Below are positions 2,357-37,633 of a stretch of 64,000 nucleotides of DNA, piece after piece; position 1 is the first letter of the stretch; the number at the start of each line of letters is the position of its first letter. Both the position numbers and the translations under genes were made by a program. The stretch spans positions 124,001 to 188,000 of the IMG/VR virus record IMGVR_UViG_3300035698_029839, one strand, 5' to 3'. The notes under the pieces are model-generated. The model saw nothing but the letters and a program-made list of their open reading frames with translations. It was not told the DNA's origin and did no database searches.

Positions 2357-2405
2357 GACATAGGTGTGTAAATTTTTATATTTATGTGCCTATGTCATTT
2401 TTTTT
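2357..2405 (+). terminator. intrinsic terminator
   Basis: GACATAGG.../...CCTATGTC stem then T-run. Confidence 0.65.
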
Positions 2406-2417
2406 AAAGGGTTATAT

Positions 2418-5400
2418 ATGGCAAAATATTTAGTAATAGTAGAGTCTCCTAAAAAAACAGGGTATATTAAAAAATTTCTTGGTAAGGATTATGAAGTAAC
2501 AGCTTCTGTAGGGCATATTAGGGACTTACCACCTAAAAAAATTGGTGTTAGTATTAAAAAAGATTTTGAACCAACATATGAAATTTATCCTGATAAAAAA
2601 GATATAGTAAAAAATATACAAAAAATGGCTGGTAGATCAGATCTTGTTTATATAGCAACGGACATGGATCGTGAAGGAGAAGGAATAGCTCAACATATAG
2701 CAGATATACTTCCCCAAGGAACAGATTTTAAAAGAATAGTTTATGGTTCGGTTACTAAAAAGGCAGTAGAAGATGCTATAAATAATGCTGGTGAAATAAA
2801 TAAGGATATGGTTAATAGTTATGAGTGTAGGCGTATACTGGATCGTATCGTAGGATGGAAATCTAGTTTCATTGTCTCTCAGGCTACTGGAGGAAGATCA
2901 GCAGGAAGAGTTCAAAGTGCGGCCTTAAGAATACTTGCTGAAAGAGAGAAAGAAATACAAAATTTTATCCCAAAAGAATATTGGCCTATCGAGGTAGAAT
3001 TGGAAAGAGAAAATGGAGAAAGGGTTATTGCCACTATTAAAGTCCCAAAATCCTTAGACATTAAGACTGGGGAAGAAGCTAATAAAATTATCGATGTCCT
3101 TAAAAAAGAAAAATGGGTTGTTTCTAAGTATGAAGCAAAAGAAAAAACAAATAAAGCTTATGCTCCATTCACAACATCCACCTTATATCAATCATCTTCT
3201 TCTATTCTTGGTTGGAGTTCCAAGAAAACAGCATCTGTAGCTCAACAACTATATGAAGAGGGGTTGTGTTTGTCGGGAGATGAAGTTATAACTATGGAGA
3301 ATGGAGCAATTATTCCTATAAAAGATGCTGGTAAATATATTGGTCAAAATGTTAAGGTATTCGGGGGAATAGAAGAAGAAATAAATTTGAAGATTCAAAA
3401 CGCTAAAATTAAAGATTATCAAAAAATTCCTTATGCAGGACATATGTATAATATTAAAACTTTTGATGGACAAGAGATATCTGTTACTCACGATCATAAA
3501 CTGTTAACATATAATAAAAATGGATTTGAATGGAAAAAAGCTTGTCATTTATATAAAAATGATTTTGTCATTTGTGCAAAAAAAATAGAATGTAGCAGGG
3601 GGGATAGGGACATTCATATAATAGATTTTATTTCTCAAATGCCGTCGTCGATAACTGATAAAATTTTGGTAGGCTTTTATCCTAAATATAAAAATAAAAT
3701 ATTAAAAATTATAGAGGATAATAGAGGTTTTATATCATCTCAGTCTACTTATTATAAATATAAAAGAAATCTTAAAATACCGCTTTCTTTTTTTAATCTG
3801 TATTACGATATGGATTTTCTAAAAAAGAGTATAAAATATTTTCAATGGCAAAGTGCTGGCTCTAAAAAAGAATACATGAAAGCAGACAATTTTTCTTATT
3901 TTTTGGGATTATGTCTTGGAGATGGACATATATGCAAAGATAAAGCAATGATTAATTTCCCGAAATGCGTAGCAAAGGAAGGGGAATGGAAAAAGATATT
4001 TAAAGGTATTATTTATGAGCAAAAAATTAATTTGAATAGAAATGAAATTCAGTTTTCAGGTAAAATTTTATATGAATTATGTGCTTATTTCGGTGGGGCT
4101 AAGGGATCTAAAAGTGATAAAATTTATATTCATCCATTTGTTTCGTCTTTGCCTGAAAAATATATATATAATTTTATAGCTGGTTTGTTCGATTCTGACG
4201 GGTGTATTAATCTTTCGAAAAATCGAAAAATTAGCATATCGTATACTAGTATCAGCCAGAAGATGTTGAAACAATTTGTAGTGCTTCTTAGAACACTGGG
4301 ATACTGTAGTAGTTTGCATCGCAGAAAGAATGATAATAAAAATGGAAATATTAAAATTTGGGAAGAATCAATTAAAGATTTTCTTCTAAATATAAAAAAA
4401 TATTTGATAGTCAAGCAGTTTAAAGTTTCAAGTTTGTTAAATTTGATAGATGAAAAATCAGTTGTTTTTACAGGAAAAAGTAGGAACCAGAATTATCCAG
4501 TTATGAATATTATTGAATATGAGAGACAAAAACAAGGTATAACAAAACAAAAGTTATCTCAGCATGTTTTTAAAAATAATAGCGGATATTGGTCTTATAC
4601 AAGAACAAATGATGGTCATACAAGAAGTAGTTTTCCTAGTAAAAAAAATCTTTTAAAAATAAATGAAATACTAAAAATAAAAGATATTGAAAAAATAATT
4701 AACGGAGATGAATATTTTGCGAGAATAAAGGAAATTGATGTTCAGTATTTTGATGGATATGTTTATGACATTTCTACTTCTTCAGAGAACTTTATAGCTA
4801 ATACATTTTATAGTCATAATTGCACATATATTAGAAGCGATTCAACGTTTATTGTCCCTGATTTTGTTGATGGGATAAGATGCTCAATTCCTGCTAAATA
4901 TGGGGATAATTATCTCCCTAATAAATCTAACGTGTTTTCTAATAAGGCATCTGCTCAAGAAGCTCATGAGGCTATCAGAATCACCAATATAGCTGTTGAA
5001 ACTGTTGGGGGTGTTGATACCCAAAAGCTTTATAAAATCGTCTGGAGACGAACTGTGGCTTCTCAGATGGCAAATATGGAGCAGTTTGTGGGGAATGCTG
5101 ACTTTGACTGTAAAAAGTATAAATTTACGGCAAGCGGAAGTAGAGTTATCTTCGATGGCTGGAAAAAAGTATGGACTTACGGCTCATATTCTGACTCAAT
5201 TTTACCTGAATTTGTGGTTGGGGAAGAGTTAAAATTGATAGATGTGAAAACCGAACAAAAATTCACTTCTCCACCTCCGAGATACTCAGAATCATCTCTT
5301 ACAAAAGAATTGGAAAAAAGAGGTATTGGCCGTCCGAGCACCTATGCTTCCGTCCCAAATACTCTATTTTCTAGAGGTTATATAGAAAAACAGAAAAATA

Positions 5401-5978
5401 TTATCCATACAACAGATATGGGAGTTAGAGTATCCGATTTCCTAGTCGATGTCGATTTCTGCTTCGTAGATCTTGATTTCACCAAAAATATGGAGAATGA
5501 TTTAGATTGTGTGGCAAAAGGAGATTGTAATAAATTAGATATTTTAAATTGTTTCTGGAATAGGTTGAAAAGTGATATTACCAATGCAAAAAATAAAAGA
5601 GAAGAAAATAGTAAGACAGATTATAAGTGTCCAGAATGTGGGGCTTATCTTCAAAAGAAACATTCTAAGTATGGTCCGTTTCTGAGTTGCTCAAATAGGG
5701 CTAATAAAACTATTGAATGTCAGTATAAAGCGGATATTAGTTGTGACGGAAAACCGAAGGAGAAAATAAAGGTAGAATTAGAGAAAAGTGATTTTAATTG
5801 TCCTAATTGTGGAAAGCCGCTACTTAAAAAGAAGAGCAAAAAAAACTGGGAGTATTTAGGCTGCGAATCATGGAATAAGGATGATCAGTGCAAAGGTTTC
5901 TATGATAAAGAGAGTGGAGAAAAAATAGTATTTAAAAAGAAAAAATATAAGAAGTGGGGAAAAAAGAAAAAAAAATAA
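2418..5978 (+). CDS. topA: DNA topoisomerase IA with intein and C-terminal zinc ribbons
   Basis: LVIVESP, ATDMDREGE, SAGRVQS, TYIRSDS, AHEAIR, GIGRPSTY motifs; true start ATG 2418 (MAKYLVIVESP). Confidence 0.95.
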   Translation: MAKYLVIVESPKKTGYIKKFLGKDYEVTASVGHIRDLPPKKIGVSIKKDFEPTYEIYPDKKDIVKNIQKMAGRSDLVYIATDMDREGEGIAQHIADILPQGTDFKRIVYGSVTKKAVEDAINNAGEINKDMVNSYECRRILDRIVGWKSSFIVSQATGGRSAGRVQSAALRILAEREKEIQNFIPKEYWPIEVELERENGERVIATIKVPKSLDIKTGEEANKIIDVLKKEKWVVSKYEAKEKTNKAYAPFTTSTLYQSSSSILGWSSKKTASVAQQLYEEGLCLSGDEVITMENGAIIPIKDAGKYIGQNVKVFGGIEEEINLKIQNAKIKDYQKIPYAGHMYNIKTFDGQEISVTHDHKLLTYNKNGFEWKKACHLYKNDFVICAKKIECSRGDRDIHIIDFISQMPSSITDKILVGFYPKYKNKILKIIEDNRGFISSQSTYYKYKRNLKIPLSFFNLYYDMDFLKKSIKYFQWQSAGSKKEYMKADNFSYFLGLCLGDGHICKDKAMINFPKCVAKEGEWKKIFKGIIYEQKINLNRNEIQFSGKILYELCAYFGGAKGSKSDKIYIHPFVSSLPEKYIYNFIAGLFDSDGCINLSKNRKISISYTSISQKMLKQFVVLLRTLGYCSSLHRRKNDNKNGNIKIWEESIKDFLLNIKKYLIVKQFKVSSLLNLIDEKSVVFTGKSRNQNYPVMNIIEYERQKQGITKQKLSQHVFKNNSGYWSYTRTNDGHTRSSFPSKKNLLKINEILKIKDIEKIINGDEYFARIKEIDVQYFDGYVYDISTSSENFIANTFYSHNCTYIRSDSTFIVPDFVDGIRCSIPAKYGDNYLPNKSNVFSNKASAQEAHEAIRITNIAVETVGGVDTQKLYKIVWRRTVASQMANMEQFVGNADFDCKKYKFTASGSRVIFDGWKKVWTYGSYSDSILPEFVVGEELKLIDVKTEQKFTSPPPRYSESSLTKELEKRGIGRPSTYASVPNTLFSRGYIEKQKNIIHTTDMGVRVSDFLVDVDFCFVDLDFTKNMENDLDCVAKGDCNKLDILNCFWNRLKSDITNAKNKREENSKTDYKCPECGAYLQKKHSKYGPFLSCSNRANKTIECQYKADISCDGKPKEKIKVELEKSDFNCPNCGKPLLKKKSKKNWEYLGCESWNKDDQCKGFYDKESGEKIVFKKKKYKKWGKKKKK
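3267..4820 (+). mobile_element. intein with LAGLIDADG homing endonuclease (518 aa)
   Basis: Starts CLSGD, ends SHN followed by Cys; block B TxDH; LGLCLGDG and IAGLFDSDG motifs. Confidence 0.93.
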
Positions 5979-22146: not shown

Positions 22147-24600
22147 GTGGATAAGGATTTAATTTTATCATCTTTAAAAAAAATAAGATCTTTGTTTTCT
22201 TATGTGGTTGATTGTCCAGATAAGTTACTAGGAGATCTTGCGTCTATAATCCCCGCCAGACATATGATATATCCTTGTGATATTATAGATTTGAGAAATT
22301 TTCTTATTAAAGATAGAATTGTTTCCTCTAATCCTATTTTATTGTTTTCTAATCAATTTGCTGAGAAATATTTAAAAGATCACTCTTTATTTTTGGTATT
22401 AGATTCTGAAAAAACAGGGGTAGATAATGATAGGTATGGAGGTTTGCAATTAAATTATTGTGAAGAGCTAGATATTACTAAACTTATTGTGAGGATTATA
22501 GTTAATGAACCTGCTGCTTCTGGATCTTTTAATGAGATAAAAGATATGGTTAAGGAGTTTGGGTTGGAAGTGGAATGTCTAATATCTAATAGTGTGCCAG
22601 GAATTTCTTTTCCAAATAAAAAATTATCATATAGTGTTACTCATAAAAAAGCACAAAGAATAATAGGAAAACATTCTGATCTTCCTCTTTCTCCAAAAGA
22701 AAAAAATATCTTTGAATTTTTAAGAAGAGTTAAAAAAGATAATGGTCTTAATGTCCAAATGAGAGTAGCAGGTGGATGGGTTAGAGATAAACTTCTCGGT
22801 CAAGAAAGTGATGATATAGATATTGCTGTTGATATGCCAGGATATGATTTTGCTAAGATAGTGGCTGCCGATGCTGTTAAAAATAATATAACACATGATC
22901 CTAGAGCTTATAGAGTTAGTCTGGAAAAGTCAGCAGATCCTAATGAGATAGGTATGGCTAATGATGATTTAATGGTAGGTGCTGTTTCTTTATTCGGCCA
23001 AAAAATAGAATTTGTTCCTATGAGAACAGAACATTATCCAGATATTAATAGTCGTCAGCCAACTATTGCTCTTACTAATGACCCAAGAGAAGATGTAAAG
23101 AGAAGAGACCTTACTATTAACTCTATTTATTATAATATTGATACAGGACAAATAGATGATTTTGTAGGCGGGGTAAAAGATTTAGGGTTAGAAGATGGAG
23201 AAATGAATTTAAGAACACCTGATAAAACTAAAAAAACTTATACGGAAGACCCATTAAGATTATTAAGGGCATTACGTTTTCATAGTCGTTATCCTAACAG
23301 TGTATTAGATCCTAAGATTATAGAATCTATGTCTGATCCTAATATCCAAGAAGCATATACAAAAAAAGTTGCTACAGAAAGGGCTGGTCCTGAAATAGTT
23401 AAAATGATGATGGGAGAAAATCCTATCGACTCTATTAAAATTTTATTTGATAGTGGTTTATATAAGAATATTTTTAAAGTTCCTTCGATGGAAGATCTTA
23501 ATGAAGAAGGTATTCATATGGAACAACAAACTCCTTATCACCAATATAATTTAAAAGATCATACTATCGAAGTAGTGAAAAATTTAAATAATATTATGAA
23601 AGATAATGGAGAGAGTGATTACATGAGGGGTCTTATGAATGTTGCTGCTTTATTTCATGATTTTGGAAAAATGAAAAGTGGAGTGCAAAAACCTCATCCT
23701 AAGAATAAAGGGCAAATGCAATATATAGGGCATGAAATAGAATCAACAAAGATGGCTAATGAAATATTAAAATCCATAGGGGTGGGAAAAGATGATAGAG
23801 ATATAGTAAATCAAGTTATTAGTTTGCATATGAGGCCTCATGGTGCTGAGAAATGGGGCCTAAAAGGTAAGGGTAATTTTCTTAGGAAAACAAGAATGCA
23901 TGGTAAGGATGAAGAGCATAAAGATTTATGGAAATATGTTTTGAATTTTAATAAAGCTGATGAGATGTCTTCTCAACCTGATAATTTTGATGAGGCAAAA
24001 TGGCAGAGTAAATATGATAATATTAGAAATTTTGTAGAAAGTCCTACAGGTGTATTTAAAGGAACGGTTTTGAATGGAAAGGATATCATGACTATATTTC
24101 CCGATTTAAATCCATCAACAGGGTATATTAAAGAAGTTCTTAATTTTATTAAAGAGAAACAAGATGAAGGGATAATTAATGTTGCTGCAGATTTAGAAGA
24201 GGCAAAACAGGAAGCATTCAATCAAATTAATATAATAGCTTCATCTATAAGAGATAAATATGGTTATAAGGGAGAGGAAAATAAAATGGGATCTAATTGG
24301 TATAAAAAGGTAAAGACTTCACAAATAGCTCCATTGACTAATAATGTTAAAGATAAAGAAATGGATGCAGAAATAAAAAAAGGTCCTAATGAAGCTCTTC
24401 CAAAATATCATGTGGGTATGAGGGTTAGAGATAGAAGAAAATCTATCTCTCAAGAACAGACTTACGGGAAAGTAGAACAAATAAAAGACAATAAAATAAA
24501 AATAGTTTGGAACTTCGACAATAAAGAAAAAAGACAAGAAGAAATTCTTGACATGGTGGAGAATACAGAAATATTATCTTTAATTGTATCGGAGATATAA
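22147..24600 (+). CDS. cca: CCA-adding tRNA nucleotidyltransferase with HD domain and N/C extensions
   Basis: AGGWVRD, DIDI, RRDLTIN, EDPLRLLRALRF, ER, HDFGK. Confidence 0.9.
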   Translation: MDKDLILSSLKKIRSLFSYVVDCPDKLLGDLASIIPARHMIYPCDIIDLRNFLIKDRIVSSNPILLFSNQFAEKYLKDHSLFLVLDSEKTGVDNDRYGGLQLNYCEELDITKLIVRIIVNEPAASGSFNEIKDMVKEFGLEVECLISNSVPGISFPNKKLSYSVTHKKAQRIIGKHSDLPLSPKEKNIFEFLRRVKKDNGLNVQMRVAGGWVRDKLLGQESDDIDIAVDMPGYDFAKIVAADAVKNNITHDPRAYRVSLEKSADPNEIGMANDDLMVGAVSLFGQKIEFVPMRTEHYPDINSRQPTIALTNDPREDVKRRDLTINSIYYNIDTGQIDDFVGGVKDLGLEDGEMNLRTPDKTKKTYTEDPLRLLRALRFHSRYPNSVLDPKIIESMSDPNIQEAYTKKVATERAGPEIVKMMMGENPIDSIKILFDSGLYKNIFKVPSMEDLNEEGIHMEQQTPYHQYNLKDHTIEVVKNLNNIMKDNGESDYMRGLMNVAALFHDFGKMKSGVQKPHPKNKGQMQYIGHEIESTKMANEILKSIGVGKDDRDIVNQVISLHMRPHGAEKWGLKGKGNFLRKTRMHGKDEEHKDLWKYVLNFNKADEMSSQPDNFDEAKWQSKYDNIRNFVESPTGVFKGTVLNGKDIMTIFPDLNPSTGYIKEVLNFIKEKQDEGIINVAADLEEAKQEAFNQINIIASSIRDKYGYKGEENKMGSNWYKKVKTSQIAPLTNNVKDKEMDAEIKKGPNEALPKYHVGMRVRDRRKSISQEQTYGKVEQIKDNKIKIVWNFDNKEKRQEEILDMVENTEILSLIVSEI

Positions 24601-25503: not shown

Positions 25504-26016
25504 ATGGGGTGGTTTAAAGAATCTCAAAATAATGTTTTTGTAAAAAAGGTAAAAGATGTATTAAAAAATCATTCTTTTACTAAGGCAATAGCTAACTATT
25601 ATCATATTCCTATTGAGGAAGTAGATACTCATTTAGAAATAGAAGTATGCGATCTTCATGGTAAATTTGCTGAAGGCAATGGTAAATTAATTAGAATTGA
25701 TAAGAAATTATTGGAAGATGATTTTTTTAATGATAATTTTCATTTCATTATTCACGAATTCTTTCATTGGCTAAAAAGAAGGTCAGAAGATAAATTTTAT
25801 TTTAATGACTCAGAAGAGGTTCAGAGTTTTGTTTTACAAATGACTTGGAATTTAATAGGTGGAAAAAGTAAGGAAGAAGTAACTAGAAAAATTTATCCTA
25901 TCATTAAGGCTCATTTTAAGAATCAAGACAGATTTGAAAGCATATTTAAAGAGATGTTAAATAAAGCTATCAAATTATATGAGGTTTATAAAAAAGGAGG
26001 AGAATTTTCGATTTAA
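25504..26016 (+). CDS. HExxH zincin-like protein
   Basis: IHEFFHW plus downstream EE. Confidence 0.55.
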   Translation: MGWFKESQNNVFVKKVKDVLKNHSFTKAIANYYHIPIEEVDTHLEIEVCDLHGKFAEGNGKLIRIDKKLLEDDFFNDNFHFIIHEFFHWLKRRSEDKFYFNDSEEVQSFVLQMTWNLIGGKSKEEVTRKIYPIIKAHFKNQDRFESIFKEMLNKAIKLYEVYKKGGEFSI

Positions 26017-26046: not shown

Positions 26047-26766
26047 ATGAAACGAATTAAAGTAACTCACTTTTTGCAAGATCCAGCACATTGTGCAGTT
26101 GCTGCCGCATCAACTATCGTGAATTTTTATAATCCAGATATAGATTACGAAAGTACTAAAAAAATAGCTTATAAGAAAATTAGTAAGAAAATAGCTGAAG
26201 GAGTAGGACTTGATTCTCCTGAGATTTGTACTCTTTTTAATCATCTTGGTTTTCATGATGTTTGTTTAATTACTAGTGATTTTTCATGTATAGATTATGC
26301 ATGGCGTAAATATGGTAAAAGAAAAATGAAAGAAGTTTTGCAGGAATCAATTAATCACAAAAAAGATAAAGAAGAAAAAAATTTAGTTAAAAGTCTTTAT
26401 AAGTGGTACACATTAAAGGGTTTTAATAATAATATTAAAATTGATTATAATTTTGGAAGATATATAAGGAAACAATTGAATCGAAGAAAGCCTCTTATTC
26501 TATCTTTTAATTGGACTATGTTTTTTAAATTTGCTCAAGAAGGAGATTTGGGGGCAGATTCAATTAATGGAGAATATCAAGAACATGCAGTTGTAGTAAA
26601 TGGCTATGACAAAAATGGAGTGTGGGTAGTTGACTCTCATCATAATTTTTATACCTATAATAGAAAAAAATATAGGAGAGGTTTCTATAAAATTTCTTGG
26701 GAAAATTTATTCACTTGCATGGGGCAAGGAGATGTTATTATACCTAACGATTATTATATTGAGTAG
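26047..26766 (+). CDS. C39-like (papain-fold) cysteine peptidase
   Basis: Q.P.HC, EHAVVVNGYD, VVDS catalytic pattern. Confidence 0.75.
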   Translation: MKRIKVTHFLQDPAHCAVAAASTIVNFYNPDIDYESTKKIAYKKISKKIAEGVGLDSPEICTLFNHLGFHDVCLITSDFSCIDYAWRKYGKRKMKEVLQESINHKKDKEEKNLVKSLYKWYTLKGFNNNIKIDYNFGRYIRKQLNRRKPLILSFNWTMFFKFAQEGDLGADSINGEYQEHAVVVNGYDKNGVWVVDSHHNFYTYNRKKYRRGFYKISWENLFTCMGQGDVIIPNDYYIE

Positions 26767-26775
26767 AGAGATACA

Positions 26776-27822
26776 ATGGTGTTTAATAGATATGTAGAGG
26801 GGTTTGATCAGTGTGATTCACCTGTATGTCCTGAAGATGTTGTTATAACTGTTGTGGGGATTACATGTACGTCCAATAAAATATTATATATAGAATGGAT
26901 TGTTGAGGACAAGTTTGATAGAACAATTAATTTAAATTATGTGGCGTGGTCTTGTGATTCTTTTGATTTTGACAATACTTCTTATCCTACAAATAATACT
27001 CAACCTTATAAAACTTCCCTTAATGTCTCAACATACTCTGGTCTTATTTATTTAAAAGTAAAAGTAAGAATAGGTACAACTTTTGTTGACGGCGACAGCG
27101 AGACATTTGATACTGAATTATGCGGTGGAAGCGAGAAAAATTTAGCAGTCCCAGTAATATGGTGTGGAGATTGTCCTGATAGTATAGATTCCCCACCAGA
27201 GTATCTATTATATGTTAGGTCTTCTACTATTCTTTCATATCCTGTTTATTTTAGTTATGGAGGACTATGTTGGTATGCAGATAATAGTGATAATAAAATA
27301 TCCGTAGAAGAAATACCCCTTGGTTCTATTTTAATAGATGTCAGTACTATTTATTCATCTTGTGATGGTTGCTGTTTAAAATTAGATTGCCCTAGCCCAT
27401 GGACAGTGCTGCCAGCAGATGCTCAGTCATTTTCAGGAGAGACCTCGGGAGTTTTTTATTTTGAATATCAAACGTATGCTTGTCCTGATCAACTATATGT
27501 GGTTAAGAATTTTACAACAGCAGATTGCAATTCGGAAGGTCCTTATATTCCCCCTCCTGAAAAAATATTATTTAATACAGGTTGTGTTGCTACTAGCCTT
27601 GAAGACTGTCCGTCTTTCTTTGTTGGAACTCCTTCATGTATAGATCATAATAGTCCTACATATGGTTTTTGTTTGACTGTTAGAGAAAGTGATCTACCTA
27701 TAGGAATTGTAAATGATGGTGATTGTTATAGTGGCTGTACTACCTATTGGAGGATGTGTGCTGTAGATCCAGATGGGAATACTTCCAACTGGGAAGGTGA
27801 AAATGAGTGTGTAGAGGTATAA
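26776..27822 (+). CDS. Cys-rich protein, paralog of 29628..31076
   Basis: Shared blocks FNRYVEGFDQC, KILFNTGCVATSLEDCPSFFVGTPSCI. Confidence 0.75.
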   Translation: MVFNRYVEGFDQCDSPVCPEDVVITVVGITCTSNKILYIEWIVEDKFDRTINLNYVAWSCDSFDFDNTSYPTNNTQPYKTSLNVSTYSGLIYLKVKVRIGTTFVDGDSETFDTELCGGSEKNLAVPVIWCGDCPDSIDSPPEYLLYVRSSTILSYPVYFSYGGLCWYADNSDNKISVEEIPLGSILIDVSTIYSSCDGCCLKLDCPSPWTVLPADAQSFSGETSGVFYFEYQTYACPDQLYVVKNFTTADCNSEGPYIPPPEKILFNTGCVATSLEDCPSFFVGTPSCIDHNSPTYGFCLTVRESDLPIGIVNDGDCYSGCTTYWRMCAVDPDGNTSNWEGENECVEV

Positions 27823-27872
27823 GTTTTTCAAATGGTAAATAATTAATATATTAAATAGTAAAGAAATAATAT

Positions 27873-27959
27873 ATGGCGTTTAACAAACATATAGAAGAGT
27901 TTGATCAGTGTGAACCATCCGTATGTTCTGAAGATGTTAATAGAAAAGTTATTTTGTAA
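27873..27959 (+). pseudogene. truncated third copy of the Cys-rich gene 5' end (28 aa)
   Basis: MAFNKHIEEFDQCEPSVCSEDV aligns with both paralog N-termini. Confidence 0.7.
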
Positions 27960-27972
27960 AAAGGAATTAAAA

Positions 27973-29616
27973 ATGTTGGATTGTCAAAAAGAAACAAAAA
28001 ATAAAGATATGTTTATTTGTAAGAAATTAGTAGAGAGAACTAATTATGATGATTTTAAAATTCATAAAATGAGTTGTGAACAATGTCAAAAAGTCGAAGA
28101 TCGTGACCAATTTCTATCGCGATTAGAAGAGGGATTTTATATCCAAACCCTGTTGATGCTGGATCGTAAGGATTATGTAGATGATGCAAAAAAATATATC
28201 ATTAATTGTGATAATGAAAAAGTAAGTAAAAGACTTATGCATACTTTATCTACTTTTCTCTATAAAGTTTTTATAAATAAGAATGAAATTGAGCAAAAAG
28301 AATATTTTTTAAAGAATATAAAAAGTTTAGGTATAAAAGAATTTGATGAATTTTTAGAAGATGAAGAAAATATATATTTTTATTTTAAAAATCAAATGTT
28401 ATCTGCTTTGAAAAATCATCAAGATATTGTTGAAAAAAATATAAAACAAGCAGTAGCACTTTTACTCTATAAAAAAGAATTAGTTGAAAGATTAATAGAA
28501 GAAGAAAGAGATAAATTCAGTGAATTATTTCTTGAAGATATTAAAAAATCTTTTAAAGAACAAGATTCTAATATTCGGAAGAAATTAGAAGATTCTAATT
28601 ATAGACCTACTTTAAAAGTTTCCTTAAAAGATAAAATAAAAGGGATAAAGGGGGCATTTAAAAGGATTAAAGATGTGGCCAAGAAAGAGGGTAAAGAAGC
28701 TTTATGGGTTGATGAAAAAGAAGCTCAAGAAAGAGTGGTTTGTTGCTCTACTTGTACAGAGGGAGGAAGTTGTCCTTATTGCGGTTGCCAAATAAAAAAG
28801 TCATGGTTTATGCCATTAGGTAAATCAGAATTAACTACAGAAGGATGTCCTAATCCTAATACTTATCCTCATCTTAAAAGATTCCCCCCTAAAAATTATT
28901 GGGAAGTATGTAATGAAAAAACGTCTGTTATTATTTCCGCGAAAAATGAAAAATATTTAAACAGGACTATTAATGATTTAATAGAAAAGTCTACAGGAGA
29001 TATAGAAATAATAGTAGGATTAGATGGATGTAAATACGATATTGTAGAAAATGAAATAGTTACTGTGTTTCAACGTAATAAATCTGTGGGTAGGAGAAAT
29101 ATATCTAATCAATTAGTTAATCTATCAACTGGTAAATATTTATTCGAAATAGATGCTCATTGCTCTATATCCTATGGATGGGATACTAAACTTAAATGTG
29201 TTTGTGATGACAATACTATTGTTGGATGCTCTGTAAACGCTTTAAATGAAGATTCATGGGAAGGTAATGATGATAGGTGGGTGGGTGGTAAAATAGTTGA
29301 TGATATTAAATGGAATTGGGATAAAATAAATAAAGAAGAAATGAATAAAACAGAAGAAGTAGAAAGTTTTAATTCCTGTGGATGGATGATTAGAAGAGAT
29401 TCTTTTGATGTATTAGGTGGTCACGATGAAGAATTAGGAGAATGGGGATGGGAGAATGTGGAATTTACATTAAAGAATAAAAATAATGGTGGCAAAATTA
29501 TTGTAAGAACAGATGTGATCGTTTCTCATTTGTTCAGAGAAGATTATCCCTATGAAATAAAAGGAAAGAAGTACGATGAAGTAATAAAAATATTTAAGAA
29601 TAAAAATTATTTATAA
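27973..29616 (+). CDS. GT-A glycosyltransferase, polypeptide GalNAc-transferase-like, with helical N-terminus and Cys cluster
   Basis: SVIISAKNE, EIDAHC..GW, GGHDE....WGWENVE, SHLFR..PY; start ATG 27973 after AAGGA. Confidence 0.75.
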   Translation: MLDCQKETKNKDMFICKKLVERTNYDDFKIHKMSCEQCQKVEDRDQFLSRLEEGFYIQTLLMLDRKDYVDDAKKYIINCDNEKVSKRLMHTLSTFLYKVFINKNEIEQKEYFLKNIKSLGIKEFDEFLEDEENIYFYFKNQMLSALKNHQDIVEKNIKQAVALLLYKKELVERLIEEERDKFSELFLEDIKKSFKEQDSNIRKKLEDSNYRPTLKVSLKDKIKGIKGAFKRIKDVAKKEGKEALWVDEKEAQERVVCCSTCTEGGSCPYCGCQIKKSWFMPLGKSELTTEGCPNPNTYPHLKRFPPKNYWEVCNEKTSVIISAKNEKYLNRTINDLIEKSTGDIEIIVGLDGCKYDIVENEIVTVFQRNKSVGRRNISNQLVNLSTGKYLFEIDAHCSISYGWDTKLKCVCDDNTIVGCSVNALNEDSWEGNDDRWVGGKIVDDIKWNWDKINKEEMNKTEEVESFNSCGWMIRRDSFDVLGGHDEELGEWGWENVEFTLKNKNNGGKIIVRTDVIVSHLFREDYPYEIKGKKYDEVIKIFKNKNYL

Positions 29617-29627
29617 AGATAAGTATA

Positions 29628-31076
29628 ATGGCATTTAATAGATATGTAGAGGGGTTTGATCAGTGTGAGCCTCCCGTATGTCCTGAAAACGTTGTTGTAG
29701 AAATTGTAAGCACTATTTGTACAGAAGATAAAGTATTACATGTAGGGTGGAGTGTAGCTGATGCATTTAACAGAAGTTTAAGTTCTAATGTAATTTTATG
29801 GTCTTGTGGCAATCAAGATTTTAATAATACTTCTTATCCTACAAATAATACCGAACCGTATAAAACTTCATTTGATATATCGGGTTGTTCTGGTGTTATT
29901 TATTTAAAAGCAAGGATTAGAATAGGTACAACTTTTGTAGAGGGTGATACGGAGACATTTAACACTGAATTATGCGGTCATGGCGGCGGCCCCGAGGAAA
30001 ATTTGGCAGTTCCAGCTATGCAGTGTGACAATTGTTCCAATGGAATACAACTAGAGGGTCTGTTATATGTCAAATCTTCTACTATTCCTTCTTACCCTGT
30101 TTATTTTAGTTATGTGGGAATATGTTGGTATATAAATAGTAATGATAATGAAATATCTATAGGAGATTTACCAGTTGGTTCTATTTCTATGGACATTACC
30201 ACTACTTACTCTTCTTGTGAAGATTGTTGTTTACAAATAGATTGCCCCAGTCCTTGGGTAGAAACAGAGGATGGTACTGAAATGATAGGAACTTATTATT
30301 TTGAATATCAAACGTATGCTGTTCCTGATCGGATATACGTAGTTAAGAATTTCGTAGAAGGAGAACAGTGTATTCGGGACGAAAAAAATGGGTGGTGGGT
30401 TATTAGCCCTCCCCCCCCTGAAAAAATATTATTTAATACAGGTTGCGTTGCTACTAGTCTTGAAGATTGTCCGTCTTTCTTTGTTGGAACTCCTTCGTGT
30501 ATAGAATGGGAATATCCTACATATGGTTTTTGTTTGACTGTTAGAGAAAGTGATCTACCTATAGGTGTAGTCATTGACTGTGGTTGTGATACTATTTCTC
30601 ATACTTATTGGAGAGTATGTTCTATAACTCCTGATGGAGATACTCTTTCATGGGAAGGTGGGGACGAATGCTTATGTGTATCTGATGATATTTCAAGCTC
30701 AAGCAGCTCAAGCTCAAGTAGTTCAAGTAGTTCAAGTAGTTCAAGTAGTTCAAGTAGTTCAAGTAGTTCAAGTAGTTCAAGTAGTTCAAGTAGTTCAAGT
30801 AGTTCAAGTAGCTCAAGTAGTTCAAGTAGTTCAAGTAGTTCAAGTAGTTCAAGCTCAAGTAATGATTGCGATTGTACCCAGCCAGGATTATGTGAATCTG
30901 TGCCTAAACTATGGCTTGGTGGTAATTGTGATGGGGTTGGTGCTGGTGATTGTCCTCCAGGCATAGATGATTACTGTTTATCTCATCCAACATTTACGGA
31001 GCTTTGCTCATATAGAGATCCAACTTGTATTAGTCATGAGTGCTGGTATGCTACTGTTTGTCATTGTGATTGTTAA
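29628..31076 (+). CDS. Cys-rich protein with 56-residue poly-Ser linker and Cys-rich tail
   Basis: Paralog of 26776; Ser run then CDC..C..C domain. Confidence 0.8.
   Translation: MAFNRYVEGFDQCEPPVCPENVVVEIVSTICTEDKVLHVGWSVADAFNRSLSSNVILWSCGNQDFNNTSYPTNNTEPYKTSFDISGCSGVIYLKARIRIGTTFVEGDTETFNTELCGHGGGPEENLAVPAMQCDNCSNGIQLEGLLYVKSSTIPSYPVYFSYVGICWYINSNDNEISIGDLPVGSISMDITTTYSSCEDCCLQIDCPSPWVETEDGTEMIGTYYFEYQTYAVPDRIYVVKNFVEGEQCIRDEKNGWWVISPPPPEKILFNTGCVATSLEDCPSFFVGTPSCIEWEYPTYGFCLTVRESDLPIGVVIDCGCDTISHTYWRVCSITPDGDTLSWEGGDECLCVSDDISSSSSSSSSSSSSSSSSSSSSSSSSSSSSSSSSSSSSSSSSSSSSSSSSSSSSSSSNDCDCTQPGLCESVPKLWLGGNCDGVGAGDCPPGIDDYCLSHPTFTELCSYRDPTCISHECWYATVCHCDC
30693..30860 (+). repeat. (TCAAGTAGT)n repeat encoding poly-serine
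   Basis: 168 nt, 9-nt period, 56 Ser codons. Confidence 0.95.
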
Positions 31077-31554: not shown

Positions 31555-32688
31555 ATGAAGAGAAATAATAAAGAACAAAAAGAAATACTAGAACAAAAAG
31601 AGTTTTTAAGACAAGTTATAGATGCATCTCCTAGTTTAGTTTTTGTTAAGGATATTAATGGAAAATATATTTTAGCAAATAAAGCAATGGCTAAATTATA
31701 TGGAACAACTATTACTGAAATGGAGGGAAAAACTGATCATGATTTCGCTAAAAAAAATATAATTAATGTCAAAGAAGCAGATAAATATGTTGATGCAGAT
31801 AGAGAAGTAATAGAAAATAGAAAAGAAAAATATATTAGTGAAGAAACTGTTACCAGTTTTGATGAAAAAATTACTTATTTTCAAACTAATAAAATTCCTA
31901 TTATTTTAAATGATGGTTCTGTATGTTGTCTTGGAGTTTCTTCTGATATTACAGCAAGAAAGAAATCAGAAGAAGAATTGTTAAAAGTCAATGCAGAATT
32001 AGAACAGTTTGCTTATGTGGCTTCTCATGACCTTCAAGAACCATTAAGAGCAGTTTATTCTTATTGCCAATTATTAAAAGAAAAAGAATATGATAATGTT
32101 AATGATGAGGGGAAGAAGTATTTTAACTATATAATAGATTCTAGTCTAAGAATGAGAAATCTTATTAAAGAACTTCTCGATTATTCGAGAGTTGGGAGAA
32201 AAGATAAACCATTTGAAAAAATTAATTTAGGAGAAGTATTAGAGGAAGTATTGAATGATTTTGAAGTTCTGATAAAAGAGACAGAAGCTAATATAATTAT
32301 TGATCGCGATATACCACATATTTTTGGTATACGTTTTAGAATTAAACAATTGTTACATAATATAATTAGTAATTCATTAAAATTCAAAAGTGAGGAAAAA
32401 CCTGTTATAAGAATAATTTGTTGCAATTATAAAAAAAATTCTCATTATTGGCTTTTTTATATTAAAGATAATGGACTAGGAATAGAGCCAAAATATTATG
32501 ATCGTATTTTTGGGATTTTTAAAAGATTGTATTCAAGAGAAGAATATCCTGGTACAGGAATAGGATTAGCATTATGCAAAAGGATTGTAGAGGCCCATGG
32601 TGGTAAAATATGGGTAAAATCTCAAAAAGATAAAGGAACTTGTATCTATTTTACGATTGCTAAATCATGGGGTATTTTTGATAATTAA
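31555..32688 (+). CDS. cytoplasmic PAS-domain histidine kinase
   Basis: PAS (FVKDING.Y..AN), ASHDLQEPLR, N-box, DNGLGI, GTGIGLA; no TM segment. Confidence 0.93.
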   Translation: MKRNNKEQKEILEQKEFLRQVIDASPSLVFVKDINGKYILANKAMAKLYGTTITEMEGKTDHDFAKKNIINVKEADKYVDADREVIENRKEKYISEETVTSFDEKITYFQTNKIPIILNDGSVCCLGVSSDITARKKSEEELLKVNAELEQFAYVASHDLQEPLRAVYSYCQLLKEKEYDNVNDEGKKYFNYIIDSSLRMRNLIKELLDYSRVGRKDKPFEKINLGEVLEEVLNDFEVLIKETEANIIIDRDIPHIFGIRFRIKQLLHNIISNSLKFKSEEKPVIRIICCNYKKNSHYWLFYIKDNGLGIEPKYYDRIFGIFKRLYSREEYPGTGIGLALCKRIVEAHGGKIWVKSQKDKGTCIYFTIAKSWGIFDN

Positions 32689-35667: not shown

Positions 35668-36111
35668 TTACATTGCAGCAGATTTTTTAGATGAATGCGT
35701 TGAATTTAAAGTAGCAAAAGTCAAAGCTCTGGAAAGATCTTTTGGTTGTATTTCGTCTTTAATTAAATAATCTTTAATTCCTAATAACCATGCTTTTCGT
35801 CCGATAGAATAATCTTCTAATCCTGTTAGAACGATAACTGGTATATTTTTGTTGTGTTTTCCGAGATGGTTTAATGTCGTTTCTACTGTTTCTATTCCAT
35901 CTGATTCTGGTAGCGCTAAATCAAGGATGATAGCGTCATAATTCTGTGAGGATAATTTTGTTAGTCCATGTTTTAGACAATTGCATTCGTCAATTATGAT
36001 GTTATTTTTTTCAAATTGGTTAATATAGTTAATTATTAAGTCCCTGTCTTCTTTACTATCTTCTATTAGTAGTACTTTCATTTTTTTTTTGTCCTTTCTA
36101 TTTATAAACAA
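35668..36111 (-). CDS. single-domain response regulator
   Basis: LLIED, ILDLALPESDG, VLTG, DYLIK. Confidence 0.92.
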   Translation of the reverse strand: MFINRKDKKKMKVLLIEDSKEDRDLIINYINQFEKNNIIIDECNCLKHGLTKLSSQNYDAIILDLALPESDGIETVETTLNHLGKHNKNIPVIVLTGLEDYSIGRKAWLLGIKDYLIKDEIQPKDLSRALTFATLNSTHSSKKSAAM

Positions 36112-36551
36112 GAATTCTTATTATCTGGTAGTTTGTTAGATTTTAACCAGTATTCTCCTATCATATTTACTTTTTCATATAATTCATTAATGTCAAAAGT
36201 TTTAGTGACGTATGAATTAGCATGTAATTTATATGTTTCTTCTATATCAGAATAATCTTCAGAAGTGCTAAATATAATGACAGGTATCGCTTTGTAGTTT
36301 TCGTCATTTTTTATTGCTTTAAGTATTTCTTTTCCACTAAGTCCTGGCAAATTTATATCTAAAAGAATAATATTAGGAGTTGGTGCGGATTCAAATTTGT
36401 CTTTTTTATAGAGGAAATTTAAAGCGTCGCCGCCATTAGTTAGATTGAGGATATTTAATGAAAGATTAGGAATCTTGTTTAAAGCTTGTTTTATAAGCTC
36501 AAAATCAGCTTCATTGTCTTCTATAGATAGCACAGTGAATCTTTTACACAT
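36102..36551 (-). CDS. single-domain response regulator (Rcp1/CheY-like)
   Basis: IEDN.AD, LLDINLP, FSTS, ANSYVTK. Confidence 0.92.
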   Translation of the reverse strand: MCKRFTVLSIEDNEADFELIKQALNKIPNLSLNILNLTNGGDALNFLYKKDKFESAPTPNIILLDINLPGLSGKEILKAIKNDENYKAIPVIIFSTSEDYSDIEETYKLHANSYVTKTFDINELYEKVNMIGEYWLKSNKLPDNKNSCL

Positions 36552-36685: not shown

Positions 36686-37633
36686 ATGAGTAATGGTAAT
36701 ATTCCAGTTATTAGTATCAGTGCAAAAACCATCCCTGAGGCATGGGAAAGGGCGGTTTTGGCAGTTTGGAGTCAGGGCACGAAAGTGAAAACGCAGTATG
36801 ATAAGCCAGAAGATCCACCAAGTAGAGATGCTACAGTAATGGTATCTGTGGAAGATCCCTTTGCTGAGCCAAGAATTCATAAGAATTTTCCTGGGGGACC
36901 AGCAGAATTAGAATCATATAGGCAAGAAGTGGTAAATGGTATTCATGACCATTGGATAGATCCCGAGAATGATAAATGGACATATACTTACCATGAAAGA
37001 CTATTTAACTATTCTCCTTGTGTAGATTTGAGTAAATCAGACTCTTTACGACCTTTTATTCCTGTTGATCAGATACAGTATATTATAGATTATTTAGCTA
37101 AATCGGGTCACACAAGACGAGCACAGGCTATTACTTGGCAACCTACATGTGATCCACAGACATATGATCCACCATGCTTACAGAGGGTCTGGTGTCGTAT
37201 GATGGAAGATGAGGAAGGTAATCCTGTTTTGAATATGAATACACACTGGAGATCTCGTTGTCTCTATAAGGCTTGGTTTATGAATGCATATGCTATGACT
37301 GATCTTCAAAGATTTATGGCCGAAAAAATAAGTGAAAAAATAGAAAAAACTGTAAAAGTAGGAAGATATATGGATATAAGTGATTCTTTACATCTTTATG
37401 GTAGTTATTTTGGTGAAATTGAGCCAGAAGTTAAGAAAATGAAAGAAAATCCTATATGTCTTGACTGTTCTTTAGAATATAATGAATGTACAGCAGATTA
37501 TATAGAATCTATAAGAAACAATTTAACGCAAAGGACTTATAATACAACAGATACTGCTTTTAAGATGATGACAGATGAAGCAAAAGAAAATCTTAAAAGA
37601 AATCCTGATTATTATAGCGAAGGCGATAAATGA
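36686..37633 (+). CDS. thymidylate synthase-family enzyme (archaeal-like)
   Basis: YTYHERL, RRA, DPPCLQ, RS, N, SLHLY. Confidence 0.85.
   Translation: MSNGNIPVISISAKTIPEAWERAVLAVWSQGTKVKTQYDKPEDPPSRDATVMVSVEDPFAEPRIHKNFPGGPAELESYRQEVVNGIHDHWIDPENDKWTYTYHERLFNYSPCVDLSKSDSLRPFIPVDQIQYIIDYLAKSGHTRRAQAITWQPTCDPQTYDPPCLQRVWCRMMEDEEGNPVLNMNTHWRSRCLYKAWFMNAYAMTDLQRFMAEKISEKIEKTVKVGRYMDISDSLHLYGSYFGEIEPEVKKMKENPICLDCSLEYNECTADYIESIRNNLTQRTYNTTDTAFKMMTDEAKENLKRNPDYYSEGDK

What the first reader, a model, noticed from the sequence alone, without database searches (positions are those of the whole stretch)
26047..31076. Candidate phage mucin-type O-glycosylation module
Seen: a GT-A enzyme (27973) with DAHC..GW, GGHDE....WGWENVE and HLFR..PY lies between two Cys-rich paralogs. 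One of them has a 56-Ser tract tethering a small Cys-rich tail. A C39-like peptidase lies just upstream. Established: DxH, WGGEN.E and GH.FR..PY are the signature motifs of eukaryotic polypeptide GalNAc-transferases (GT27), which glycosylate Ser/Thr-rich tracts. Inference: the phage glycosylates its own poly-Ser, probably virion-surface, protein to make a mucin-like stalk for adhesion or shielding, with proteolytic maturation.
Basis: partly seen in the sequence, partly recalled or inferred. Interest (0 to 1): 0.75.

Follow-up and report, generated by a model that had tools for sequence, protein, structure and literature searches.

The report
Phage mucin-type O-glycosylation gene module
A huge phage from salt-lake metagenomes carries a sugar-adding enzyme whose closest known relatives are the animal enzymes that start mucin glycosylation, and across many unrelated phages this enzyme sits next to proteins with long poly-serine or poly-threonine stalks, so phages probably build their own mucin-like stalks, although no enzyme assay has been done.

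Summary
The four tightly packed + strand genes are:
- a C39-like cysteine peptidase
- Cys-rich paralog A (348 aa)
- a glycosyltransferase
- Cys-rich paralog B (482 aa: a base of beta-sandwich domains, a 56-Ser tract and a 71-aa tail with 12 Cys)

By sequence and by predicted fold, the GT-A domain is closest to polypeptide GalNAc-transferases (GT27). A family profile scores E 1e-18 against them, against 3e-7 for the next family. The top 50 Foldseek PDB hits are all GT27, and VIA-align gives Z 24. The DxH, WGxEN.E and H.FR..PY motifs align motif to motif. The enzyme lacks the lectin domain and membrane anchor of GT27 and instead has a conserved zinc-ribbon-like Cys cluster.

Across 34 dereplicated homologous loci, ORFs with poly-Ser, poly-Thr or SP-repeat tracts lie next to the GT. 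The count is 18 of 263 ORFs within 4 kb against 1 of 223 farther away. In small phages these proteins sit at the tail-fibre position.

The C39-like peptidase keeps its catalytic residues and travels with one N-terminal motif family.

Best reading (confidence about 0.6): a phage-encoded mucin-type protein O-glycosylation system. Enzyme activity, donor sugar, virion location in this phage and the protease's role are untested.

The parts
25504..26016 (+). 170-aa protein with an HEFFH (HExxH-type) motif. It is conserved at this syntenic position in relatives. Whether it belongs to the module is uncertain.
   Evidence: The ORF and motif are seen. Syntenic 166-170-aa genes occur in L004, L007, L008 and L009. 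Pfam, PHROGs and NCBIfam give no hit.
26047..26766 (+). Stand-alone C39-like (papain-fold) cysteine peptidase with predicted catalytic residues Q11, C16, H180 and D196.
   Evidence: Pfam PF13529 at E 3.4e-10. ESM Atlas feature score 0.98 and TM 0.83 to Peptidase_C39 clusters. Q11, C16, H180 and D196 are invariant in 9 orthologs. The gene lies within about 3 kb of the GT in 9 dereplicated loci, in varying gene order. It co-occurs with the N-terminal motif family in 7 of 9 loci against 1 of 25.
26776..27822 (+). Cys-rich paralog A (348 aa, 22 Cys). It consists only of the beta-sandwich base, with no linker and no distal domain.
   Evidence: It is 63% identical to paralog B. The AF2 model has pLDDT 74.6 and is all-beta, a string of Ig/FN3-like sandwiches. 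Homologs carry variable C-termini.
27873..27953 (+). 27-codon relic of the N-terminus of a third paralog (MAFNKHIEEFDQCEPSVCSEDVNRKVI). It is out of frame with the GT.
   Evidence: tblastn hit at E 5.3e-5; translation.
27973..29616 (+). GT27-like glycosyltransferase.
- N-terminal C4 motif and helical region: about nt 27973-28660.
- Zinc-ribbon-like Cys cluster (CCSTC...CPYCGC...C): about nt 28741-28905.
- GT-A catalytic domain: about nt 28918-29613. It carries DAHC (nt 29152), GGHDE..WGWENVE (nt 29416-29463) and HLFREDYPY (nt 29527).
   Evidence: Pfam PF00535 at E 6e-11 and a weak Glyco_transf_7C hit. phmmer against PDB returns only ppGalNAc-Ts down to E 2e-12; the next family scores 0.04. The A1 profile gives 1e-18 against 3e-7. 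The AF2 model has pLDDT 90.4. The Foldseek PDB top 50 are all GT27. VIA-align gives Z 24.0 and 21.7 for GT27 against 19.6 or less for other families. The Cys cluster is invariant in 32 homologs.
29628..30692 (+). Paralog B, N-terminal Cys-rich beta-sandwich base (aa 1-355, 23 Cys).
30693..30860 (+). Poly-Ser tract (56 Ser), the predicted O-glycosylation target and stalk. It is encoded largely by a 9-nt minisatellite.
   Evidence: It is the only run of 8 or more Ser/Thr in an ORF of the 297.7-kb genome.
30861..31076 (+). Distal 71-aa Cys-rich tail (12 Cys) of paralog B. It is an orphan domain.
   Evidence: No homologs were found. Analogous but unrelated Cys-rich distal domains follow the S/T tracts in relatives.

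Best explanation
This is a phage-encoded mucin-type protein O-glycosylation module.

The proposed mechanism has four steps.
- The GT (27973-29616) is a soluble, cytoplasmic, metal-dependent GT-A enzyme of the GT27 (polypeptide GalNAc-transferase) type.
- During infection it transfers a sugar from a nucleotide sugar onto the hydroxyls of the homopolymeric Ser tract of the neighbouring paralog B. In relatives the target would be poly-Ser, poly-Thr, PT or SP-repeat tracts.
- Dense O-glycosylation would turn the tract into a stiff, protease-resistant, mucin-like stalk.
- The stalk would hold a variable distal domain away from a conserved Cys-rich base of beta-sandwich domains. The distal domain is a Cys-rich knot here, and LamG or beta-propeller-like repeats in relatives.

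This is the architecture of a fibre or adhesin.

The stand-alone C39-like peptidase probably processes the same protein family. One candidate cleavage site is the disordered N-terminal leader that precedes the conserved G-[FY]-D-x-C-x-P-P-x-C motif.

What is shown:
- gene content and motifs
- GT27-type sequence and fold
- conserved adjacency of the GT to S/T-tract proteins
- an intact catalytic set in the peptidase

What is inferred:
- that the tract is the acceptor
- the identity of the sugar
- the stalk function
- virion attachment in this phage
- the protease's substrate
For: 1. The GT is of GT27 type.
- phmmer of the catalytic domain against all PDB sequences returns 15 ppGalNAc-T entries (best E 2.3e-12). 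The next family scores 0.04.
- A 32-member family profile gives 1.1e-18 over the whole GT-A domain, against 3.2e-7 for the next family.
- The AF2 model has pLDDT 90.4. The 50 best Foldseek PDB matches are all ppGalNAc-Ts, with E down to 7.5e-17.
- An all-against-all VIA-align search puts GalNAc-T1 at Z 24.0 with 241 aligned residues and TgGalNAc-T3 at Z 21.7. Every other GT-A family scores 19.6 or less.
- The DxH, WG.EN.E and H.FR..PY motifs align motif to motif. By established knowledge of GT27, these include the Mn ligands.

2. The GT co-occurs with S/T-tract proteins.
- The only run of 8 or more Ser/Thr in this 297.7-kb genome is in the gene next to this GT. None lies next to the seven other GT2 genes.
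- In 34 dereplicated GT clusters, S/T-tract ORFs number 18 of 263 within 4 kb of the GT and 1 of 223 farther away (Fisher odds ratio 16, p 2e-4). Most are directly adjacent.
- Examples:
  - L004: two proteins with poly-Ser tracts of roughly 100
  - L009: poly-Ser of at least 87
  - L008: PT and TSP repeats
  - L011 and L012: poly-Thr
  - L037: two poly-Ser proteins
  - L040, L046, L050, L054 and L057: further tracts
  - L027, L028 and L030: SPS repeats
.

3. The architecture recurs: base, then S/T tract, then a variable and usually Cys-rich distal domain.

4. Several neighbours point to a structural role.
- In small phages the tract protein follows the tape-measure or adaptor genes, at the tail-fibre position, with the GT right after it.
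- In L012 the tracts are fused to a homolog of a tail-module protein.
- Extra glycan-tailoring genes sit beside the GT in L011, L012 and L046: a methyltransferase, a rhamnosyltransferase and a sialyltransferase-like gene.

5. The base domain models as a string of Ig/FN3-like sandwiches. It weakly resembles invasins and the T5 fibre protein pb4.

6. The peptidase looks active and linked.
- Q, C, H and D are invariant.
- It is linked to the GT despite gene-order changes.
- It is linked to the N-terminal motif family.
Against: - There is no biochemical or proteomic evidence of any kind.
- In this huge phage the module lies among replication, nucleotide and signalling genes, not in a recognisable structural block.
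- Paralog A and several relatives (P0041, P0043) have no S/T tract yet sit next to the GT. The tract therefore need not be the only acceptor, or even the acceptor.
- 19 of 32 loci with at least two neighbouring genes showed no long tract near the GT. Many of these are short fragments, and some carry only short T/P-rich stretches.
- The enzyme lacks the lectin domain and lumenal topology of true GT27 enzymes.
- Some family members have lost the DxH motif.
- The loci are not phylogenetically independent, so the p-values are rough.
- The complex prediction of the GT with the tract gave no answer.
Confidence: 0.6

Rival explanations
1. The GT does glycosylate these proteins, but on Ser/Thr (or Cys) residues of the folded Cys-rich domains. 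The poly-Ser or poly-Thr tracts are merely flexible spacers.
For: Tract-less paralogs (paralog A, P0041, P0043) are equally adjacent to the GT. L010 and L013 neighbours have a Cys- and Pro-rich tail but no long S/T tract. Cys-rich composition is the most universal property of the neighbours.
Against: Distant GT homologs in L027, L028 and L030 neighbour SPS-repeat proteins with almost no Cys. S/T tracts are strongly enriched next to the GT. By established knowledge, GT27 enzymes act on extended, unstructured Ser/Thr/Pro-rich peptides.
Confidence: 0.12
2. The GT modifies a host envelope glycan or lipid-linked sugar, as in lysogenic conversion or superinfection exclusion. It sits near fibre genes only because such accessory genes commonly lie at the end of tail modules.
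For: In L010 the GT lies between the tail genes and an integrase, a classic position for conversion genes. The enzyme matches the generic GT2 Pfam family. The genome has many other GT2 genes plus RmlB and an RmlD-like gene, which suggests polysaccharide-type chemistry.
Against: The enzyme has no membrane segment. Its sequence and fold are nearest to polypeptide transferases, not to GtrB- or polymerase-type GT2 enzymes: GtrB scores Z 13.3 against 24 for GalNAc-T1. This reading does not explain why the neighbour specifically carries homopolymeric S/T tracts in lytic-looking huge phages and small phages alike.
Confidence: 0.1
3. This is a RiPP- or glycocin-like system. The Cys-rich distal domains are precursors that are glycosylated, possibly S-linked, and then cut free by the C39-like peptidase as secreted toxins or signals.
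For: A C39-type peptidase, a GT2-class enzyme and Cys-rich peptides are the ingredients of glycocin clusters (own knowledge of the sublancin sunA/sunS/sunT cluster). A radical SAM gene lies between the GT and the peptidase in L007 and L008. The tail of paralog B contains an LGG sequence.
Against: The precursors are 350-1000 aa with large folded bases. There is no ABC transporter, no classic double-glycine leader and no signal peptide. Small-phage members lack the peptidase altogether. Several distal domains are lectin-like or propeller-like rather than peptide-like. The peptidase correlates with the N-terminal motif, not with the distal domains.
Confidence: 0.07
4. The GT glycosylates modified phage DNA, as an anti-restriction hypermodification. 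The zinc-ribbon-like modules would bind DNA.
For: Two Cys4-type modules precede the catalytic domain. A divergent thymidylate-synthase-like gene that scores below the ThyA cut-off lies 5.6 kb downstream. Phage GTs are often DNA-modifying (PMC12619734).
Against: The fold and motifs are of the polypeptide-transferase type. In small phages the GT sits in the tail module, not with replication genes. This reading does not explain the S/T-tract neighbours.
Confidence: 0.03

Closest known systems
Eukaryotic UDP-GalNAc:polypeptide N-acetylgalactosaminyltransferases (CAZy GT27; e.g. GalNAc-T1 1xhb/8v9q, GalNAc-T2 4d0t, Toxoplasma GalNAc-T3 6s22)
   Same: - This is the best sequence and structure match by a wide margin.
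- The GT-A fold and the DxH, Gal/GalNAc-T (WG.EN.E) and H.FR..PY motifs are aligned.
- The predicted acceptors are dense Ser/Thr/Pro tracts.
   Different: - Identity is only about 22-24%.
- There is no C-terminal ricin-type lectin domain, no signal anchor and no lumenal topology.
- A conserved zinc-ribbon-like Cys cluster and an N-terminal C4/helical region are added.
- The enzyme would act in a bacterial cytoplasm.
- The donor sugar is unknown.
Mycobacteriophage virion glycosylation (Freeman et al. 2023, as cited in PMC12619734)
   Same: Phage-encoded glycosyltransferases modify the phage's own structural proteins. Glycans are reported at the C-termini of capsid and tail-tube subunits, acting as a shield.
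   Different: The targets there are capsid and tail-tube termini, not homopolymeric S/T stalks in modular fibre-like proteins. I could not compare the enzymes because the paper is not held. tblastn of this GT against 50,697 GenBank phage records, run at E<=1e-3, found nothing, so the GT is not a relative detectable at that sensitivity.
Serine-rich repeat adhesin glycosylation in Gram-positive bacteria (GtfA/GtfB plus accessory GTs such as GalT1, PDB 5hea)
   Same: In both, Ser-rich stalks of adhesins would be O-glycosylated in the cytoplasm before display (own knowledge). GalT1 of that pathway is the next-best PDB sequence match after GT27.
   Different: The initiating enzymes there are GT-B (GT4) GtfA/B, and export uses SecA2/SecY2. 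None of these is present here. Here the GT is GT27-like and release would be by lysis.
Glycocin / double-glycine bacteriocin maturation (GT2 S-glycosyltransferase plus C39 peptidase-ABC transporter)
   Same: The combination of a GT2-class enzyme, a C39-type cysteine peptidase and Cys-rich substrates is shared.
   Different: The peptidase here is stand-alone, with no ABC transporter. The substrates are large modular proteins. The GT is nearest to O-GalNAc transferases.
Uncharacterised bacterial GT27-like proteins (e.g. AFDB clusters D5SZ87, annotated 'Polypeptide N-acetylgalactosaminyltransferase', and A0A1F7YW97)
   Same: They have the same catalytic fold at Foldseek E 1e-15 to 1e-21. This shows that the GT27-like type exists outside eukaryotes. 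The phage profile finds 257 clusters (50% identity) at E<=1e-30.
   Different: None has a demonstrated function. Their architectures differ (large multidomain proteins), and their genomic contexts were not examined here.

Membership tests
GT27 polypeptide GalNAc-transferase | GT-A catalytic domain with the DxH metal-binding motif | tested here: met
   DAHC at aa 418-421 aligns with the LDAHCE motif of GalNAc-T1 and TgGalNAc-T3. It is kept in most but not all of the 32 homologs.
GT27 polypeptide GalNAc-transferase | Gal/GalNAc-T motif (D..x..WGGENxE) | tested here: met
   GGHDEELGEWGWENVE aligns with 'YD.GMDIWGGENLE'. There is also a weak Pfam Glyco_transf_7C hit at E 0.027. The second G is replaced by W.
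GT27 polypeptide GalNAc-transferase | Third metal ligand His in GH[VI]FR..PY | tested here: met
   SHLFREDYPY aligns with GHVFRKATPY.
GT27 polypeptide GalNAc-transferase | Closer to GT27 than to any other GT family by sequence and by fold | tested here: met
   Profile E 1.1e-18 against 3.2e-7 for the next family. The Foldseek top 50 are all GT27. VIA-align Z 24.0 and 21.7 against 19.6 or less.
GT27 polypeptide GalNAc-transferase | C-terminal ricin-type (beta-trefoil) lectin domain | tested here: not met
   The protein ends about 20 aa after the catalytic domain and has no Pfam lectin hit.
GT27 polypeptide GalNAc-transferase | Type II membrane protein acting in a secretory-pathway lumen | tested here: not met
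   No hydrophobic anchor or signal sequence is visible in the sequence. The context is a phage of prokaryotes.
GT27 polypeptide GalNAc-transferase | Transfers GalNAc from UDP-GalNAc to Ser/Thr of polypeptides | not testable with these tools
   This needs an enzyme assay. Only indirect support exists, from the S/T-tract neighbours.
Peptidase C39 (bacteriocin-processing) / Peptidase_C39_2 | Papain-like fold with a Gln/Cys/His/Asp catalytic set | tested here: met
   PF13529 at E 3.4e-10. TM 0.83 to C39 clusters. Q11, C16, H180 and D196 are invariant in 9 orthologs.
Peptidase C39 (bacteriocin-processing) / Peptidase_C39_2 | N-terminal domain of an ABC exporter that cleaves double-glycine leaders | tested here: not met
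   It is a stand-alone 239-aa protein with no transporter nearby. Only one relative (L040) has a true GG before the conserved motif.
Glycocin (SunS-type) biosynthetic cluster | Short leader-bearing precursor peptide, S-glycosyltransferase, C39-ABC exporter and thiol-disulfide oxidoreductases | tested here: not met
   The substrates are 348-1009 aa. There is no exporter. The GT is nearest to O-GalNAc transferases.
Serine-rich repeat protein (SRRP) glycosylation system | GtfA/GtfB GT-B initiating pair and an accessory SecA2/SecY2 export system | not tested
   No such genes are seen among the neighbours, but the whole genome was not searched for them.
Phage tail fibre / receptor-binding protein | Encoded in the tail module and attached to the virion, with a conserved N-terminus and a variable distal domain | tested here: inconclusive
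   The conserved base with a variable distal domain is met. The tail-module position is met in small phages but not in this huge phage. There is no virion proteomics.

The most novel reading that the evidence does not exclude
Tailed phages of prokaryotes carry a widespread, unrecognised family of GT27-like polypeptide O-glycosylation enzymes, numbering hundreds of sequence clusters. These enzymes would build true mucin-like, densely O-glycosylated poly-Ser or poly-Thr stalks on fibre or adhesin proteins. Mucin-type glycosylation would then not be a purely eukaryotic invention. It would also give phages a glycan stalk or shield that affects adsorption, stability in brine and recognition. In one clade of huge phages the system would be coupled to a dedicated C39-like maturation protease.
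Probability: 0.5. Interest if true: 0.8.

Novelty: new variant of a known kind. Interest (0 to 1): 0.72.

Why it matters
Mucin-type O-glycosylation started by GT27 enzymes is treated as a hallmark of eukaryotes. Protein glycosylation of phage virions has so far been shown only in mycobacteriophages.

If this enzyme family works as predicted, several things follow.
- Phages would have their own way to make glycosylated poly-Ser or poly-Thr stalks.
- The odd homopolymeric S/T tracts in many metagenomic phage proteins would have an explanation.
- Soluble, lectin-free GT27-type enzymes would become available for glyco-engineering in bacteria.
- A prokaryotic-virus branch would be added to the history of GalNAc-transferases.

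The idea is directly testable by co-expressing two adjacent genes.

Tried and rejected
- GenBank phages: a megablast of the 5-kb region and a tblastn of the GT found no match. No cultured relative was found in that collection.
- PHROGs gave nothing useful for the four genes. The only hit was a spurious RDF match at E 0.0055.
- NCBIfam gave only far-below-cut-off hits for the GT and none for the peptidase.
- ESM Atlas search for the Cys-rich base gave only weak fn3/Ig leads, with scores of 0.78 or less and TM of 0.42 or less.
- The 71-aa tail had no homologs and no usable Atlas hit.
- Complex prediction of the GT core with the tract peptide gave no answer (score 0.00). This is neither support nor evidence against.
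- Laying four salt-lake runs on the region:
  - The phage is present at 2-5x with identical pieces.
  - No contig bridges the Ser repeat.
  - The repeat attracts 80-890x depth from other loci.
  - Tract-length variation could therefore not be assessed.
- Literature searches for GT27 or ppGalNAc-T in phages, and for phage O-glycosylation, found no prior description. The key mycobacteriophage paper is not held.
- An assembly or frame artefact for the poly-Ser tract was rejected. The frame stays open into a Cys-rich tail, and relatives with different repeat units keep the same architecture.
- The DNA-glycosylation and seroconversion readings were considered and ranked low (see the rival explanations).

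Full report
**Setting.** The window is bases 124001-188000 of a 297,710-bp IMG/VR virus record. CheckV estimates the record at 62% complete, so the phage is a huge one. GC content is 31% and almost all genes are on the + strand. Pieces identical to the region occur at low depth in at least four salt-lake metagenomes. The genes around the finding are not structural. They include a CCA-adding enzyme, an intein-bearing topoisomerase, a clamp loader and sliding clamp, an RNA ligase, DNA methylases, a histidine kinase with two response regulators, a VWA protein, a thymidylate-synthase-like gene and a tmRNA.

**Observation.** Four tightly spaced + strand genes, with gaps of about 10 nt, make up the module:
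- a 239-aa C39-like peptidase (26047-26766)
- Cys-rich paralog A (26776-27822, 348 aa, 22 Cys)
- the glycosyltransferase (ORF from 27901; the likely start is the ATG at 27973, where relatives begin with MLDCQ)
- Cys-rich paralog B (29628-31076, 482 aa)

The paralogs are 63% identical. Paralog B continues into exactly 56 Ser (nt 30693-30860), encoded largely by a 9-nt tandem unit, and then into a 71-aa tail with 12 Cys. A 27-codon relic of a third paralog's N-terminus lies between paralog A and the GT, which points to past cassette shuffling.

**What the GT is.** Pfam sees only generic Glycos_transf_2, plus a weak Glyco_transf_7C hit. A search of all PDB sequences is more informative.
- The catalytic domain returns 15 polypeptide GalNAc-transferases, with a best E of 2.3e-12. 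The next family scores only 0.04.
- A profile of 32 family members raises this to 1.1e-18 over the whole GT-A domain, against 3.2e-7 for the next family.
- HMMER aligns DAHC with the DxH motif, WGWENVE with WGGENLE, and SHLFREDYPY with GHVFRKATPY.
- The AlphaFold2 model is confident, with pLDDT 90.4.
- Its 50 best Foldseek matches in PDB are all GT27 enzymes.
- An all-against-all VIA-align search puts GalNAc-T1 at Z 24.0 and Toxoplasma GalNAc-T3 at Z 21.7, above every other GT-A family at 19.6 or less. GtrB scores 13.3.

The enzyme is also not a canonical GT27 member.
- It has no lectin domain and no membrane anchor.
- All homologs carry an invariant Cys cluster, CCxxC...CPxCGC...C, just before the GT-A domain. 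This looks like a zinc ribbon.
- Many also carry an N-terminal C4 motif.

The family is large. A search of 1.84 billion representative proteins finds 257 clusters at E<=1e-30. Bacterial GT27-like proteins also exist in AlphaFold DB. I found no description of such enzymes in phages.

**Co-occurrence.** This is the decisive comparative result.
- In this genome the only run of 8 or more Ser/Thr is in the gene next to this GT. The seven other GT2 genes have no such neighbour.
- In the syntenic huge phage L004, the GT is flanked by two paralogs with Ser tracts of roughly 100 residues, plus a tract-less third paralog.
- In more distant huge phages the neighbour carries a poly-Ser tract of at least 87 residues (L009) or PT and TSP repeats (L008) on a divergent version of the same N-terminal domain.
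- In small phages with GTs only about 40% identical, the neighbours carry poly-Thr tracts followed by Cys-rich domains (L011, L012, L046, L050).
- GT-only homologs at about 30% identity sit near SPS-repeat proteins, one of which ends in a LamG domain (L027, L028, L030).

I dereplicated the fetched loci to 34 GT clusters. S/T-tract ORFs number 18 of 263 within 4 kb of the GT and 1 of 223 farther away (odds ratio 16, p 2e-4), and most are directly adjacent. The loci are not phylogenetically independent, so the p-value is only indicative. The pattern does recur with different tract chemistries and different protein bases.

**The target proteins.** The common plan has three parts: a base, an S/T tract of 20 to roughly 100 residues, and a variable distal domain.
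- In the huge-phage clade the base is a roughly 350-aa Cys-rich region. It models as a string of Ig/FN3-like sandwiches (pLDDT 74.6) and weakly resembles invasins and the T5 fibre protein pb4.
- Distal domains include Cys-rich knots, LamG and propeller-like repeats. Some are fused directly to the base without a tract (P0042, P0045).
- No signal peptides are visible, so the proteins would be made and glycosylated in the cytoplasm and released at lysis.
- In small phages the tract protein is the last gene of the tail module, after the tape-measure or SU10-type adaptor genes, and is followed by the GT. Sugar-tailoring genes sometimes come next.
- In L012 the tracts are fused to a homolog of the neighbouring tail-module protein of L011.

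These points support a virion fibre or adhesin role in small phages. For the huge phage of this window, that role is an extrapolation.

**The peptidase.** The C39-like assignment is solid. Q11, C16, H180 and D196 are invariant in nine orthologs. The gene stays within about 3 kb of the GT in nine dereplicated loci, although the gene order differs. It correlates with proteins that bear the N-terminal leader-G-[FY]D-x-C-x-PP-x-C motif: 7 of 9 loci against 1 of 25. All of these loci belong to one clade. The peptidase is absent from the small phages, so it is not required by the GT. Its substrate is unknown, and leader removal is a guess.

**Donor sugar.** The donor is unknown. The genome encodes RmlB (above the curated cut-off) and an RmlD-like reductase just upstream of the window, plus seven more GT2 genes. 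Glycan elaboration beyond the first sugar is therefore plausible.

**Verdict.** The most likely explanation, at a confidence of about 0.6, is a phage-encoded mucin-type protein O-glycosylation module. A GT27-like enzyme would decorate the homopolymeric Ser tract of the adjacent modular protein and so create a mucin-like stalk that carries a variable distal domain. The rival explanations are:
- glycosylation of the folded domains only
- modification of host glycans
- a glycocin-like peptide system
- DNA glycosylation

Each fits the data less well. The finding is a new variant of known kinds (phage virion glycosylation and GT27 chemistry), and it can be tested directly by co-expressing two adjacent genes.

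Noticed in passing
window 27873-27953: A 27-codon relic (MAFNKHIEEFDQCEPSVCSEDVNRKVI) of a third Cys-rich paralog's N-terminus lies just before the GT start and out of frame with it. It suggests that cassettes were exchanged by recombination at the conserved 5' end.
   Followed up: partly
window 25504-26016: A 170-aa ORF carries an HEFFH (HExxH-like) motif. It is conserved at the same syntenic position in related huge phages. It could be a small metallopeptidase upstream of the module. No family hit was found.
   Followed up: partly
L023:1408-2232 and L022:1495-2439 (genome 121244-123009, just 5' of the window): The phage encodes a dTDP-glucose 4,6-dehydratase (RmlB, TIGR01181, 417 bits, above the cut-off) and an RmlD-like reductase. 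The genome also has seven further GT2 genes at 12-15, 71-76 and 95-101 kb. This is a large phage-borne glycan toolkit.
   Followed up: partly
window 2364-5978: A type IA topoisomerase gene is interrupted by an intein with a LAGLIDADG homing endonuclease.
   Followed up: no
window 60288-61370: A 360-aa protein combines a solute-binding (SBP_bac_3 / Lig_chan-Glu_bd) domain with an ion-channel pore. This is a GluR0-like ligand-gated channel encoded by a phage.
   Followed up: no
window 53330-53679: ARAGORN predicts a phage-encoded tmRNA gene with the tag peptide DTSYAKAA.
   Followed up: no
window 31555-32688 (+), 35668-36111 (-) and 36102-36551 (-): A PAS-type histidine kinase (HisKA and HATPase_c domains in the syntenic L004 gene) is encoded just downstream of the module. 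Two ORFs on the minus strand sit where the syntenic relatives encode two receiver-domain response regulators. Synteny is conserved in related huge phages, where the kinase can be much longer (694 aa, with sCache and PAS domains).
   Followed up: partly
window 22147-24600: An 817-aa CCA-adding enzyme or poly(A) polymerase-like protein has an HD domain and a long C-terminal extension. It is conserved upstream of the module in all huge-phage relatives.
   Followed up: no
window 30675-30896: In four salt-lake metagenomes this Ser-repeat stretch attracts 80-890x contig depth, against 2-5x for its flanks, and the contigs have many different flanking sequences. Similar Ser-coding repeats are therefore abundant in that community.
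   Followed up: partly
L007:11143-11778 and L008:8810-9445: In one related huge phage a radical-SAM-like gene and a 196-aa ORF lie between the GT and the C39-like peptidase. This hints at further protein modification.
   Followed up: no
L010:8596-10035 and L013:8151-9698: In two small phages the gene before the GT is a trypsin-like (GDSGS) protease domain (PHROG 20754, E 3e-36). It is fused to a Pro-rich and Cys-rich C-terminal tail instead of a long S/T tract.
   Followed up: partly
window 36686-37633: A thymidylate-synthase-like protein scores well below the ThyA equivalog cut-off (130 bits against 175). Whether it is a ThyA or a pyrimidine hydroxymethylase is open.
   Followed up: no
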